Program-made: the position numbers and the translations under genes
From: Diadema antillarum
Taxonomy: Eukaryota
Assembly: GCF_040938485.1 (NCBI RefSeq)
Contig: NW_027270951.1
Span: 1 to 64,000, forward strand
Length of the DNA stretch: 64,000 nt
Reading direction: 5' to 3'
The notes under the pieces: model-generated
What the model saw: the letters and a program-made list of their open reading frames with translations, nothing else
The model's database searches: none
What the model was told of the DNA's origin: nothing
In this document: in pieces, positions 17,541 through 62,601 of the stretch
How positions within the stretch are numbered: the first letter of the stretch is position 1
Layout of the letters: every line of letters starts with the position of its first letter

Positions 17541-18899
17541 TTTGTCAGTCTTGACAAATTCCAAGTCTAGTTCATTTTGACTTTTCAAGCTTTTCTCTTT
17601 TTTGTTGTTGTTGTTTGTTTTTATTAGTTAGTTAGAAGTATCACGTTGGAAACACCTCTTATCCTACATCCAGGCTATATGGTGTATCCAGATCACGTGG
17701 CCGCTTGCACTGTAAACAGTTGTTGTGTTGTTTAATTTGTCTGTTGTTGTTTTTTAATTAAAATTCACACTAACTTCGTCACTTGAACTCAAATGAGTTT
17801 CCTTCAGACGTTTCGTTGAGCCACGGATATGGATGTCAGAAATTAAATCAACGCGATATCTCTCGAACACCTGCGAGTAAGGCTTGGCATTGGTTTAACT
17901 TGTTTCTGTTTTTGTTTTATATTTCCCTTTTGATTCGACAGAGAAAATTTTGAAAATATCGTTCTGTCGCTATTTTTTGAAGAGCAAAGCATCGATACGG
18001 ACAGGTTTATCAATCAGTTGTTAGGAATTCACTTCGATTACACCGGAAGGACGGATCAAAGTCGACCAAGACTAGTCAACCAGTCTTTTGAACTTTATTA
18101 TGAATTATCCCCGCAATTTCACTTTCCGTGTTTTACGCAAACTTGATTTCTTAATTCACACACATCTTCTCAGAATTTCATCGACGGTTGTTTCGAACTA
18201 CACGACTCAAAACTTTCCCAGCTCAAACTACGCAATGCAGGAAAACTGTGAACCCTACGAAAATATTAAAGAACTTCATTGTCCTTTTCATGCTTTGCGA
18301 TTTCATTAAACTTCGAACACTTCATATATAAAGAAATTACGTAAACTCAGGCACTGAGTGCCATAGACAATGAATTACAAATGTGGCCCGCTCAGTAAGA
18401 ACCATTTCTTTATAATAATGGTAAATTGATATTATAAAACTTCCTTGCTCAGTATCACTGTGGAACATTACACCCGGAAGTGGCATGTTCTAATGCTTCC
18501 GGTTCAAGGCAGTGGTTGACCACCACTTTCGAAAATTGGGAAGTGGTAAGCAACATGGCCGAAGGGCATTACTTTCCACAATCTGGTTGAGACCGATAAG
18601 AAACTTTATACACGCGAAAGGAGGCGGTCACCACGCAGTCTAGGGTCCATTAGTGCTTTACTCTCACACCAATCGGGAAATGACGAGTGACAAACAAACA
18701 ACGGAAATGTAACCCGAAGACTATCGAAATCAACCCCGGGCAAACAACAGGTCATGGATGAAAAAAGCCACGAGTACTCATAATCAGCAACACAACAACT
18801 TGAATGTTGTCGCAAACAATGTGTAATATGCTCCATCGACTGCAAGCATGCACGTGGCATTTCACGCTTTATAGCGCCCGGCAGCACACTCCCTTCGAG

Positions 18900-18916
18900 C
18901 AGGGAGGTGGTCCCTG
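18900..18916. mobile_element. 17-bp palindromic insertion with near-perfect 7-bp flanking repeat
   Basis: CTTCGAG|CAGGGAGGTGGTCCCTG|CTTCGAA. Confidence 0.55.
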
Positions 18917-19633
18917 CTTCGAATAACCATGATAACTGTAATATAATTTCCAGTGGAGACACCGTGTAAAATAATAACAAGAAAATAACATGTAATATAC
19001 AAATTCTGTGCCACACACAAACCAGTCACTAAATTTGTGTATATTATGCAAATACACTAATCTGCTTCAAATCCTGAAATTTGCAAGTTTTTTTTTAAAT
19101 CTGTTAAGAGGTCCTTGAAAGCGGACTATAATGGCTTCACCACCAAAACACTTCGTGTAGCTTCATTAAAACATAAGATACTTAAAGTAAAGTGTCTTCA
19201 GCCCTCAAAACGAGGTGCACTTTTTAAGAAATTCACCCCTCACCAACCACAGCAAGTTCATTATTATAAAACCGACATTGTTTGTATTTCGTTAAATTCA
19301 TTTTAAGTGTATCTTTGGCATACGACAGCTAGAGTGTTGTGGCTCAAGTAGTAGTAGTGCCGAAAGTGGCTTGTTCAGTGACTAAACAGACACAAAAGAA
19401 AGAGCTAAAAAATCTGTGGATTGTAAGAAAATTGGCACTATAGTACGTATTTTGATAAGAATGTTGTCCAGTAAAAATAATTTTAGTTCAATTTCCTTTG
19501 AGAGCCATATCAGGGTGGTTTTACGTCAAACAACCTCGATAAAAATTAATATCAACCAAGATCTTAATATCAACCAAGATCCCCTTTTTACTTCGTCCCT
19601 CTCTATATATCTCCCTCCCTATCTCTCCCTCTC

Positions 19634-19634
19634 C

Positions 19635-19674
<40 letters not shown>

Positions 19675-19690
19675 GTCTGTCTGTCTGTCT
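19634..19690. repeat. (TCTA)n/(TCTG)n microsatellite
   Basis: Direct reading. Confidence 0.9.
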
Positions 19691-59463: not shown

Positions 59464-59519
59464 ACCTTAAAATGGCATGTTAAAGGGAGATAACCTTAAA
59501 ATGGCATGTTAAAGGGAGA
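59464..59519. repeat. Perfect 27-bp direct duplication, period 29
   Basis: ACCTTAAAATGGCATGTTAAAGGGAGA twice. Confidence 0.9.
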
Positions 59520-61204
59520 CAACAGGAAAATAACAAATGACATTTTCTCATCAAAACTACAATGATAGCGGTGGCAAATGCCCGATTTTCCCCAACTACA
59601 CAAGATGGAGAGCCAAACACGGCAACGAAAACTGTTCATCAAACTATTCCGATATTCAAATTGGAACTGGCTGAAGAAAGTCAACTCTAGACGGAAGTAA
59701 CGAAAATGATAACTGTTATATGGACAAATGACACGTTTTTTTAAGGTAGAGGTGCAATGCAGATGAGAGCAGCGATGAAATGGCAGATTCAGGCGCAGCG
59801 GGCGGATGAGACTTCACAGAAGTCATGTTTGTACAATCTCCTTGGCAACAGATATGCCTATGATACGCAGTATCTTTAATCTGAAGTAGTCATTGAATAT
59901 GAACACAGATCAGTTTCCATCTCCCTGCTTAGATCACCCAAGCAAGTGAATACAGCGATGTGTAAATTCTGACAGTTTAAATCAATGTTGACCTTGCTGA
60001 ATAAATGTGTTAATGAACTGGTCTATTAGACTGGGCCAGGACTTTAATTTCACGTTAAAGGGCATGCATAAAGACGAATTGCTCGTAATGAGCAACTCAT
60101 TTTGTATACCTACGTGTTTCAGTGCAGTTTCTTCTCCCGGCCCCCTGCCACCCTTAATCAATTTTGATCGCGTATTATTACATTCTGCCAAAGCTTTGGC
60201 AAGCCGTCTCGTTGCTAGGGGAAACCATGAAATTATACATACGATTTGAAAACATGCCATCGGTATGTCCATTTTTAGCATTAAGCATGCATCTTATATA
60301 GATGTTTAGTATTCCGCTTAGAATTCCAATGATTGCAACCGCCTTACTGAGCATCATTTAGGGCTAAATCCTTCCCCTATCTTTCCGTATGTGTACATAA
60401 GTGACGGCATGAACTAAGGTAAATTGAAGATATGGCAATCACTTACGTAATAGGTGCACCCCAATGACACTGAACATTGCGAATCCTCTCTGTTGCGTAA
60501 GTAATGATCCTTTATGCTCCATGGTGGGTATCCGGTTGCTCATCTACAAGAACAAGTCTGAAAATGCTCAGAAACAGTATCAATTCTTGTAAGACGTTTG
60601 TAGATAATACAGATACGTTCGCTCCGTGTAGCGGTCCCCTAGAACTGTCCCCGAGTAACGGGCAAGCGGATCACCAGCGTTCCGTAGCGGTCCTGTTGGC
60701 ACAATACGGCTCAATAGTAATCTTTAGAATTCCAGCAGAAGTCAATAAGATTAGGGCAGTTGCAATCCGAAAAGCTATTTCAAACCAGTCAAACATTGAC
60801 ACACACGAAGAAGAATTTCAACCTCCCAATCCTGTATAGGGTCCTACTGATGAGTGACTACAGTCTACAAACGTAACGTACGGATCGAGGTTGGGAGCTG
60901 CTGATAAACAGACGTATCATACAAAGTCCACGTTCTCGGCCTCTCGTCTGCACGTGTGTGAGCCAAGCAGTCCTAGCAATGGGTAACGTTGGGCTTGTGT
61001 CCTCCAACAACAAAAGTTTTCATGCCCACTTGCGCATTACATGTTCGGAGAAAAGTGAAACACTAAAAACTCCGCATGTGCGCGCGCTGCCTCTCGTCAT
61101 GGTACAACTACGATCGCCTTGCACGGACCAGTCATAATGCATGGAAATTGTTGAACCACTTAACATACCTTTATTCAATGCTTTTGTTCGCAGATAGACG
61201 AGTA

Positions 61205-61640
61205 CCCATGTCTCTCTTTCACCTCTCTTTTCTCTTCGCTCTCTCTCCTCTCCCCTCTTCTTCCTTCTTCTCTTATTTTGTCTTCTCTCCAGTTTCCTTT
61301 CTGTTCTCTTCTTTTCCGATTTATTTCTTTCCTTCTATATTCTTTTCTTTTCTCTTCTCTCTTCTTTTTCCATTCTCCTCCATTCTTTTCTCTTCTCTCC
61401 ATTTCCTTTTTTGTTCTTCTCTTTTTTCTTCTTTCTCTTCTCTATCATTTTCACTTCTACTATTTTCTAGTCTCTTCTAGCCTCTTCTTTTCTTCTCGAT
61501 CTTTCTTCTTCCCTTCGTTTCCACTCAATGTTCTTCTTTTCTCTTTTTCTTTTTCTCTTCTCCACTCTTAGTTTCCTCCTTTTCCTTCTTTCCATGAGCT
61601 CTCCCTCCTCTTCTACTTTATGTGTCTTCCATCTCTCTTC
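61205..61640. repeat. CT-rich low-complexity tract
   Basis: Almost purine-free strand; source of several spurious F/S/L-rich ORFs. Confidence 0.85.
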
Positions 61641-61964
61641 CTATCCCTGTTTACTCTATCTCTTGTCGGTGCCTTTATGCACTTTTATTCGGTTAGGTGA
61701 TAGCACCAAATACAGGAACCCCTACAATAGCTACGTCCAAAAGCTAGCATTTACTGTCTTCATTTCAGCACAAAGGATCAACCGAACTAGAACTGATTCT
61801 CTTTGAATTCAGATGTCAGGATTTTCAACGTGGGGGAGAAAAAAATACGACAAAGGGAGTGTGTATATCTGTTGCTTTACCCCCCCCCCCTTTTTTTTTT
61901 TCTTTTTTTTTTCAACATGGGAGCTCCTACTTTAATAGTTACAACACCTTCCCGTTAGGTATAG

Positions 61965-61988
61965 CAAGGAGCTATTAATAGCTCCTTG
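61965..61988. mobile_element. 24-bp perfect palindrome with perfect 7-bp flanking repeat
   Basis: GGTATAG|CAAGGAGCTATTAATAGCTCCTTG|GGTATAG. Confidence 0.65.
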
Positions 61989-62601
61989 GGTATAGCTTTC
62001 AGACGTGTATTGCTATTCCGGGACTGTAAAGCCAAGTTTATACCTGATTGCCAATTAGCATGTGGCTAGTTTTATTTCGTGTAGTTGTTTGTGTCCTTGC
62101 ACGGCGTTCACTACTGCATACAAAACAAAAACAAAAAATGTTAGGAATATCACGATTAATTGCCAATAAGCAAATTTGTTATACTTTTGGTGCCAAAAAA
62201 GTCAATTTTAGAAACAAACAGAAAAAAAAACTTTTTCCTTGGCAATGATCTACAATATGTTTCTAGCTGATCGTCTCCCCAAAATTTTTAAGTCACAAAA
62301 CAAATTAATTTTGATTACTTCACGATGACTGGAGTGAGGACAAAGTCGTAGTACAGTAATTTGTGATATTGTTTGATTGAATGTACTAAGTGAAATGTAT
62401 TATTTTCACATTTTATTATTACCTCTACCATTTTTACAAAGCTGCTTTTTTCTTATCGACAAGAACGCTTGTCCTGCTATCGACCAGACATAAAAGTACA
62501 ATGTAAAGGATACTCAGCTGAATTTGTTAACTTTCATGTTTCCGTGTTACTAATACGTTTAATATGATTAATATGACGCTGACGTGGGGCACTGTTCACA
62601 C

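What the first reader, a model, noticed from the sequence alone, without database searches (positions are those of the whole stretch)
18893..61995. Family of ultra-short CA...TG palindromes with 7-bp target duplications: probable P/Galileo-type excision footprints
Seen: at least seven 17-39-bp inserts (18900, 30687, 51691, 52601, 52639, 52694, 61965) start CA, end TG, have inverted ends and sit between 7-bp direct repeats; four pairs are perfect. They fall into three end types: CAGGGAGGT, CAAGGAGCT and CATGGA. The left heptamers TTCTAAC, ATTATAC, GCATAAC, GGTATAG, CTTCGAG, CTTCTAC and CTTCTAT all have A at position 6, and five of seven have T at position 2. An exact 7-mer match at a fixed position is about 1 in 16,000 at uniform composition, somewhat more likely in AT-rich DNA. 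Established: P-superfamily elements end CA...TG, Galileo-type members make 7-bp TSDs at palindromic targets, and Drosophila P transposase leaves 17-nt 3' overhangs, so repair often keeps ~15-17 bp of each TIR between the TSDs. Inference: these are scars of several related P-like families that have inserted and excised, or minimal palindromic elements mobilised in trans. At about one per 9 kb they would be abundant, yet too short for standard repeat annotation.
Basis: partly seen in the sequence, partly recalled or inferred. Interest (0 to 1): 0.82.

Follow-up and report, generated by a model that had tools for sequence, protein, structure and literature searches.

The report
Transposon excision scars in sea urchin
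These 17-39-bp palindromes are scars left where cut-and-paste jumping genes, probably of a P-element-like kind, once sat in the sea-urchin genome and then left. Their shape records how the vanished enzyme cut the DNA: a known kind of scar, rarely documented as fixed features of a wild genome.

Summary
Observation confirmed. All seven inserts sit where stated: a 7-bp direct repeat, a CA...TG mini-palindrome, then the same 7-bp repeat. Among 620 CA...TG mini-palindromes in the window, flanking-repeat length decays geometrically and then spikes at exactly 7. The end motifs are 13-80 times over-represented. The assembly gap (42767-42904) touches none of them.

Contigs from three samples carry the 51.7-52.7-kb scars. 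A related species carries the 51691 scar in a less decayed form. So the scars read are old and fixed, not assembly errors.

One scan of public metagenome contigs found 22 more scars with CAGGGAGGTG ends and matching 7-bp repeats, in unrelated animal-like contigs. There and here, each scar is two truncated copies of one terminal repeat. The arms are joined blunt, by 1-2 nt of microhomology, or with filler. Arms never exceed 19-20 nt. This is the architecture of experimental Drosophila P-element excision products (17-nt overhangs). Targets favour nTnnnAn.

No longer element or transposase could be reached. P-superfamily membership is therefore inferred from mechanism and duplication length. Tol2-like (hAT) termini are a caveat. 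Other first readers of this scan noted similar hairpins elsewhere in this genome.

The parts
18893..18923 (.). Scar s1: heptamer CTTCGAG / 17-bp insert (arms 11 + 6 nt of the CAGGGAGGTGG end) / CTTCGAA
30680..30710 (.). Scar s2: TTCTAAC / 17-bp CATGGA...TCCATG insert (arms 6 + 11) / TTCTAAC. The right flank also begins CATGG, which is unexplained.
51684..51735 (.). Scar s3: ATTATAC / 38-bp insert (two arms of 19 nt; 18 in the relative B) / ATTATAC. Present in the related species with a canonical right arm.
52594..52666 (.). Stacked scars on one target. Heptamer copies at 52594-52600, 52604-52610, 52632-52638 and 52660-52666. Between them lie a 3-5-nt remnant, a 21-bp CAAGGAGC palindrome (52611-52631) and a 21-bp CATGGACC palindrome (52639-52659).
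52687..52739 (.). Scar s5: GCATAAC / 39-bp insert (an 11-nt direct partial copy of the end, then arms of 19 + 9 nt) / GCATAAC
61958..61995 (.). Scar s6: GGTATAG / 24-bp perfect palindrome (two CAAGGAGCTATT arms meeting on a self-complementary TTAA) / GGTATAG
4283..4295 (-). Solo end: 13 nt identical to the long arm of s5 (CAGGGAGGTGAGA). No partner end and no matching heptamer.
52742..52751 (+). Solo CATGGACCTA end 2 nt after the right heptamer of s5, identical to the left arm of the 52639 insert
51462..51524 (.). Scar-like insert of another end type: AATCAAA / 49-bp imperfect palindrome GTGGTC...GACCAC / AATCAAA
51270..51310 (.). Scar-like insert of another end type: ATGGTAG / 27-bp TCCCTT...AAGGG / ATGGTAG

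Best explanation
Each insert is the repaired donor site of a cut-and-paste DNA transposon that has left. Shown: insertion duplicated a 7-bp target of the form nTnnnAn. Each insert consists of two inward-truncated copies of one terminal inverted repeat that begins CA. In the best sampled family that repeat is CAGGGAGGTG followed by about ten more conserved bases. Inferred: on excision the transposase cut one strand at the element boundary and the other about 19-20 nt inside the element. Each flank therefore kept a single-stranded tail of terminal-repeat sequence, as the Drosophila P transposase does with 17 nt. End joining then trimmed the two non-complementary tails by variable amounts. It joined them blunt, at 1-4 nt of microhomology, or after short, sometimes templated, synthesis. 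Three related families (ends CAGGGAGG, CAAGGAGC, CATGGACC) used the same kind of target, sometimes the same heptamer repeatedly. The events that could be dated are old: fixed in the species, and one shared with a relative about 5% diverged. The enzyme is most likely a P-superfamily (Galileo/1360-like, 7-bp duplication) transposase, but that step is inference.
For: Structure and statistics in the window. No element longer than 39 bp with these ends and matching heptamers. This argues against random internal deletion. Real DNA, fixed and old: contigs of three samples span 52554-52809, and two samples span 51691. The relative's contig covers 51691-52233, and its two differences (51721 T>C, one T fewer at 51726) restore the canonical end CAGGGAGGTGG. 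Independent replication: of 120 metagenome contigs matching the two 10-nt ends 0-30 nt apart, 19 have perfect and 3 have one-mismatch 7-bp flanking repeats, where about 0.01 is expected by chance. All 22 lie in low-GC animal-like contigs. Their insert lengths are 21-37 and never 38-50, although that range was allowed; 26 of 96 chance hits exceed 37. Their arms are 10-20 nt with a secondary peak at 18-20. Junctions are blunt, 1-2 nt microhomology, or 1-9 nt filler. Their targets show T2+A6 in 30/44 (P about 9e-7), plus T at -3 and A at +3 in 32/44. Window arms are all 19 nt or less (s3 19+19, 19+18 in the less decayed copy of relative B; s5 19+9). Literature: the 17-nt stagger is unusual among characterised transposases (PMC7776569). 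Experimental P footprints are target repeat, up to 17 nt, microhomology or templated filler, up to 17 nt, target repeat (PMC2895639). Galileo has 7-bp duplications with consensus GTANTAC (PMC4168063). Window heptamers match that consensus 22/42 against 0.27 expected per position, and the external ones 55/132. The P target motif spans the duplication plus 3 nt each side (PMC2577343), the same geometry as here.
Against: No longer element with these termini and no transposase gene was found in the window or in the fetched contigs. The superfamily is therefore unproven. The arm maximum is 19-20 nt, not 17. The best sampled terminal repeat shares AGGTGTAAAA with the ends of Tol2, a hAT element, and two end types fit the hAT rule YARNG. 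Three of the 23 external inserts read are identical 29-mers (two with a perfect 7-bp repeat, L055 without), as a mobile mini-element would also give. The flank of s2 begins with the same CATGG as the insert, and the CATGGACCTA arm of the 52639 insert recurs 100 bp away. The CATGGA type could therefore partly be local templated repair. The -3/+3 target signal of the external set is not reproduced in the seven window sites.
Confidence: 0.72

Rival explanations
1. The scars come from a hAT-like (Tol2-related) or other non-P superfamily. Either its transposase also cuts far inside the element, or its donor gaps are filled by abortive copying from the sister chromatid.
For: The termini CAGGG and CAAGG fit the hAT end rule. 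The external terminal repeat shares 10 consecutive bases with both Tol2 ends. T at position 2 and A at the last-but-one position are also the hAT target rule (own knowledge).
Against: The duplication is strictly 7 bp, not 8; the base before the left heptamer is G in only 1 of 5 window sites. Characterised hAT enzymes leave hairpins on the flanks and no transposon-end sequence (own knowledge). Abortive copying would give no ceiling at 19-20 nt, and intermediate-size derivatives should exist, but none do.
Confidence: 0.15
2. The palindromes are themselves ultra-minimal non-autonomous elements that a transposase moves in trans.
For: They have inverted ends and target duplications. Three of the 23 external inserts read are the identical 29-mer at different sites, two of them flanked by a perfect 7-bp repeat.
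Against: Within each end type, lengths and centres differ from site to site: 17/38/39, 21/24 and 17/21 in the window, 21-37 outside. Every insert decomposes into two independently truncated arms of one repeat. Arms are often very unequal (20+10, 10+19). By analogy with the P element, transposition needs internal transposase-binding sites and subterminal repeats well inside the ends as well as the 31-bp terminal repeats (PMC7776569); inserts of 17-39 bp have no room for such sites.
Confidence: 0.08
3. They are not transposon-related, but local replication errors (template switching, hairpin-primed synthesis) or chance.
For: Short palindromes and short duplications both arise by template switching. 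The 52639 arm has a possible local template 100 bp away.
Against: The same 9-13-nt ends recur at unlinked sites in the window and in unrelated contigs from other assemblies. The flanking repeat is always exactly 7 bp. The targets share a motif. Shuffles give far fewer.
Confidence: 0.02

Closest known systems
Excision footprints of the Drosophila melanogaster P element (end joining at the 17-nt 3' tails; tables in PMC2895639; mechanism in PMC7776569)
   Same: Target duplication, up to a fixed number of terminal-repeat bases starting CA, then microhomology or templated filler, then the inverted terminal-repeat bases ending TG, then the target duplication. Arms are unequal and the same junctions recur.
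   Different: The duplication is 7 bp, not 8, and the arm ceiling is 19-20 nt, not 17. The terminal sequence is different. These are natural, fixed, old scars in an echinoid and other animals rather than laboratory products. The enzyme was not identified.
Galileo and 1360 (P superfamily, Drosophila)
   Same: 7-bp target duplications at a palindromic target with T at position 2 and A at position 6 (GTANTAC; PMC4168063).
   Different: Galileo has very long fold-back terminal repeats, and its flank preference differs (AAN before, NTT after). No footprints of this kind are reported in that paper.
Tol2 and other hAT elements
   Same: Ends start CAG. Ten bases are shared between the Tol2 ends and the external terminal repeat. 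The target has T near the start and A near the end.
   Different: hAT makes 8-bp duplications. In the one paper read, Tol2 excision restored the site exactly (PMC2848417). Characterised hAT enzymes leave no long transposon-end remnants.
MITEs and bacterial REP/REPIN palindromes
   Same: Short non-coding inverted-repeat sequences scattered through a genome.
   Different: Those families consist of copies with a shared internal sequence and length. Here every copy has its own centre and length, and all are far below the size of known eukaryotic MITEs.

Membership tests
P superfamily of DNA transposons | Target-site duplication of 7-8 bp | tested here: met
   Exactly 7 bp at 4 perfect and 3 imperfect window sites and at 22 external sites. 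Spike at 7 and nothing above.
P superfamily of DNA transposons | Donor cleavage with a long stagger inside the terminal repeat (17 nt in Drosophila), so that footprints keep terminal-repeat bases | tested here: met
   Indirect. Arms are bounded at 19-20 nt with a secondary peak at 18-20. Insert length never exceeds 38, or 39 with a templated copy. The length differs from 17.
P superfamily of DNA transposons | Palindromic target motif spanning the duplication plus about 3 nt on each side | tested here: inconclusive
   T2/A6 holds in both sets. The -3/+3 signal is strong in the external set only.
P superfamily of DNA transposons | Autonomous copies encode a THAP (or related zinc) domain plus an RNase-H-like catalytic domain with a GTP-binding insertion | not testable with these tools
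   No longer element with these ends in the window or in 41 kb of external contigs. The rest of the genome could not be searched.
hAT superfamily | 8-bp target duplication | tested here: not met
   7 bp throughout. An 8-bp reading is possible at only one window site.
hAT superfamily | Footprints without transposon-end sequence (flank hairpin mechanism) | tested here: not met
   Up to 20 nt of each end is retained.
MITE-like mobile mini-element | Copies at different sites share length and internal sequence | tested here: not met
   All 7 window inserts differ. Of the 23 external inserts read, only one 29-mer recurs, three times.

The most novel reading that the evidence does not exclude
The scars mark an undescribed, widely distributed lineage of animal cut-and-paste transposons. 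It would have a conserved CAGGGAGGTG terminus, 7-bp duplications at a 13-bp palindromic target, and a donor stagger of about 20 nt, longer than any characterised. Its footprints would greatly outnumber surviving copies. Genomes would then hold a countable fossil record of excision events from which the cleavage geometry of a lost enzyme can be read.
Probability: 0.25. Interest if true: 0.65.

Novelty: new member of a known kind. Interest (0 to 1): 0.45.

Why it matters
Repeat annotation does not see inserts of 17-39 bp. Yet each one records a complete insertion and excision cycle. If the density seen here holds genome-wide, such scars are a sizeable source of short indels and hairpin-forming sequence in echinoid genomes. 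They would also give a direct count of past transposition, independent of surviving copies. The sharp arm ceiling predicts a testable biochemical property of the parent transposase: a 19-20-nt staggered cut. The shared terminus in unrelated animal contigs points to a family wider than this sea urchin.

Tried and rejected
1. Search for parent elements in the window. CA..TG pairs up to 8 kb with matching heptamers and all pairs of near-matches to the three ends up to 15 kb gave only the short inserts.
2. Partner search for the solo ends at 4295, 4433, 10308 and 3298: none found.
3. Window-wide repeat search: it found other MITEs, none with these ends.
4. Pfam scan of the ten longest window ORFs: nothing, so there is no transposase relic to use as a query.
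5. Protein search with the ORF spanning s1, to find alleles with or without the insert, and an exact look-up of an ORF next to s3: nothing on record.
6. Earlier notes of this scan: similar hairpins were noted on other pieces, and P-type transposons were noted in this genome. No termini were given.
7. Viral-contig scans for the two external terminal repeats: blank.
8. Identification of the host of assembly GCA_013332995.1 through a TRIM-like ORF, an RNF13-like ORF and paper searches: it is an animal, otherwise unidentified.
9. BLAST of the external scar contigs against the window: no hit, so the host is not a close relative.
10. Rfam scan of the window: no match.
11. Polymorphism: no empty allele was seen. 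The tables list only the best-supported differences, and one contig of sample X2 has 26 gap letters in 52097-52815 that were not itemised.
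Full report
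THE OBSERVATION

I read all seven places. Each has the stated form: a heptamer, an insert that starts CA and ends TG with inverted ends, and the heptamer again.
- The heptamer pairs are perfect at 30680, 51684, 52687 and 61958.
- They match 6/7 at 18893 and 5/7 at 52632/52660.
There are four decaying copies of CTTCTAC: 52594-52600, 52604-52610, 52632-52638 and 52660-52666. They are separated by a 3-5-nt remnant, a 21-bp CAAGGAGC palindrome (52611-52631) and a 21-bp CATGGACC palindrome (52639-52659). This means repeated use of one target.

The assembly gap at 42767-42904 lies in none of the sites or their repeats. The finding's span is only the envelope of scattered short sites, so continuity across the gap does not bear on it.

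IS IT MORE THAN CHANCE?

Yes, on several counts.
- Exact 7-bp repeats around a 12-45-bp insert with 5-bp perfect inverted ends occur 4 times, against 0.28 expected from order-2 Markov shuffles.
- The clearest test is. Among 620 CA..TG mini-palindromes, the length of the exact flanking repeat falls off as 416, 135, 38, 19, 7, 1, 1 for lengths 0-6. It then rises to 3 at length 7, with nothing longer.
- The end motifs themselves are strongly enriched: CAGGGAGGTG 5 against 0.06, CAAGGAGCT 3 against 0.23, CATGGACCTA 2 against 0.09.
- That scan also turned up solo ends. The one at 4283-4295 shares 13 nt with the long arm of the 52694 insert.
- Allowing any end sequence, seven distinct loci have a 7-bp repeat around a short palindrome, against 0.78 expected. 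Four have other end types (43734, 48869, 51270, 51461), so the phenomenon is not limited to the three named types.

IS IT REAL DNA, AND HOW OLD?

Logan contigs of three samples of the species were laid on 50000-54500.
- Contigs of X1, X2 and X3 span 52554-52809. X3 has no difference, X1 has one, and X2 spans the region with unlisted small gaps.
- X1 and X2 span the 51691 insert.
- A contig of a related organism (X4, about 5% substitutions) aligns from exactly 51691 to 52233.
- Within the insert, X4 differs by 51721 T>C and by one T fewer at 51726. Together these turn the decayed right arm of the window into the canonical inverted end CAGGGAGGTGG.

The insert therefore predates the split of the two organisms, and the window copy has since mutated. 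No empty allele was seen. Sixty-seven letters of the X4 contig to the left of 51691 lie on nothing in the window, and I cannot explain that.

ANATOMY

Within an end type the inserts differ in length and centre: 17, 38 and 39 bp; 21 and 24 bp; 17 and 21 bp. Each can be split into two arms that are inward-truncated copies of one terminal repeat.
- For the CAGGGAGG type, the long arms at 51691 (left and right) and at 52705 agree over about 19 nt once the relative's version is used.
- Arm lengths are 11+6, 19+19 (19+18 in the relative) and 19+9. The 52694 insert also carries an extra 11-nt direct copy of the end.
- The 24-bp insert at 61965 is two 12-nt arms meeting on a self-complementary TTAA.
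- No arm exceeds 19 nt.
- No element longer than 39 bp with these ends and matching heptamers exists in the window.

REPLICATION OUTSIDE THE WINDOW

One scan of public metagenome contigs was run for the two 10-nt ends 0-30 nt apart.
- Ninety-six hits have unrelated flanks. Most of these lie in GC-rich contigs and look like chance hairpins.
- Nineteen have perfect and three have one-mismatch 7-bp flanking repeats. All 22 are in contigs of 32-44% G+C.
- Most of the 22 (18 by the locus list) come from one NCBI metagenome assembly (GCA_013332995.1). Four, including L044, L082 and L090, come from JGI samples.
- The contigs carry animal genes: a TRIM-like ORF, an RNF13-like ORF and a receptor ligand-binding domain. 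They share no sequence with the window. They therefore come from other hosts, which I could not identify.

The 22 inserts behave as follows.
- They are 21-37 bp long and never 38-50, although that range was allowed. Twenty-six of the 96 chance hits exceed 37.
- Against the consensus terminal repeat CAGGGAGGTGTAAAAGAAAT and two sub-variants, arm lengths run from 10 (the floor set by the pattern) to 20. There is a secondary peak at 18-20 and nothing longer.
- Junctions are blunt, 1-2 nt microhomology, or 1-9 nt filler.
- L090 holds a second scar 60 bp upstream, with its own heptamer GTTAGAA.

TARGETS

- In the independent external set they make 30 of 44 (P about 9e-7).
- The external set adds T three bases before and A three bases after the duplication in 32 of 44, giving a 13-bp palindromic motif. 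The seven window sites do not reproduce this flank signal.
- Matches to the published Galileo consensus GTANTAC are 22/42 and 55/132, against 0.27 per position expected.

MECHANISM

The P-element transposase makes an unusually long 17-nt staggered cut at each end (PMC7776569). Sequenced repair products of P excision in flies have a set form: the 8-bp target repeat, up to 17 nt of the left end starting CATG, microhomology or templated filler, up to 17 nt of the right end, and the target repeat (tables of PMC2895639).

The inserts here have this architecture, with a 7-bp repeat and a ceiling of 19-20 nt. Shown here:
- the decomposition into two truncated arms;
- the ceiling on arm length;
- the junction types;
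- the 7-bp duplication;
- the target bias;
- fixation and age.

Inferred:
- the ceiling equals the length of a 3' tail left by a staggered cut;
- the enzyme is P-like.

Galileo and 1360 are the P-superfamily members with 7-bp duplications (PMC4168063). The P target motif spans the duplication plus three bases on each side (PMC2577343), the same geometry as the external set.

CAVEATS AND RIVALS

- No parent element or transposase was reached, so superfamily membership is not tested at its defining feature.
- The termini CAGGG and CAAGG fit the hAT end rule. The external terminal repeat shares AGGTGTAAAA with both ends of Tol2 (primers in PMC4818426). Against hAT stand the strict 7-bp duplication and the retention of long end remnants.
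- A mobile mini-palindrome is disfavoured by the variety of centres and the unequal arms. Even so, one 29-mer occurs at three external sites.
- The CATGGA type is the weakest. The flank of the 30687 insert starts with the same CATGG, and the CATGGACCTA arm of the 52639 insert recurs at 52742. Local templated repair could have contributed there.

VERDICT

This is a known kind of scar, documented here as old, fixed features of a sea-urchin genome and of other animal DNA. It comes from families whose elements were not seen. It predicts a 19-20-nt stagger for the parent enzyme. Other first readers of this scan noted similar hairpins on other pieces of this genome, and I could not read those.

Noticed in passing
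window 50600-50849: A 250-bp element with 45-nt terminal inverted repeats has an assembler word depth of up to about 900,000 against a baseline of about 15. This holds in all four runs, including the related organism, so it is an extremely abundant MITE-like repeat.
   Followed up: partly
window 51208-51665: A high-copy repeat ends in a poly-A run. Other genomic copies end near 51458 with an A-rich tail (loose ends), so it is SINE-like. This copy carries the 49-bp and 27-bp scar-like inserts.
   Followed up: partly
window 51691, contig of run X4: The relative's contig aligns from exactly the first base of the insert. Its 67 letters to the left match nothing in the window. Something differs between the two organisms right at the left heptamer.
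   Followed up: no
window 43734-43766 and 48869-48912: Two further short palindromes lie between exact 8-bp direct repeats: GACAAATC around 17 bp, and TGTGAATG around 28 bp. Their ends differ from the three named types. They may be scars of other families or chance.
   Followed up: partly
window 22955-23525 and 31401-31984: Two copies of a roughly 570-bp fold-back element, about 88% alike, with arms of about 80 nt that begin TTTAAAGGACAAGT.
   Followed up: no
window 645-771, 25904-26427, 62673-62757: Degenerate telomere-like arrays (CCTAA/CCCTAA variants). One pair lies in inverted orientation 400 nt apart with 97% complementary arms.
   Followed up: no
window 52529-52555 and 52806-52823: A C-rich run and a G-rich run in inverted orientation bracket the 52.6-kb cluster of scars. 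Depth is raised about tenfold at 52416-52566.
   Followed up: no
L006, L024, L032, L042, L046 and about ten more loci: An identical 37-nt hairpin with the same CAGGGAGGTG ends and constant flanks recurs in many gut-metagenome contigs of about 54% G+C. It is a conserved bacterial stem-loop unrelated to the scars and matched the pattern by chance.
   Followed up: no
L090 480-600: Two scars with different heptamers (GTTAGAA and CTTTTAC/T) lie 60 bp apart, about 130 bp from the end of an RNF13-like PA-RING open reading frame.
   Followed up: partly
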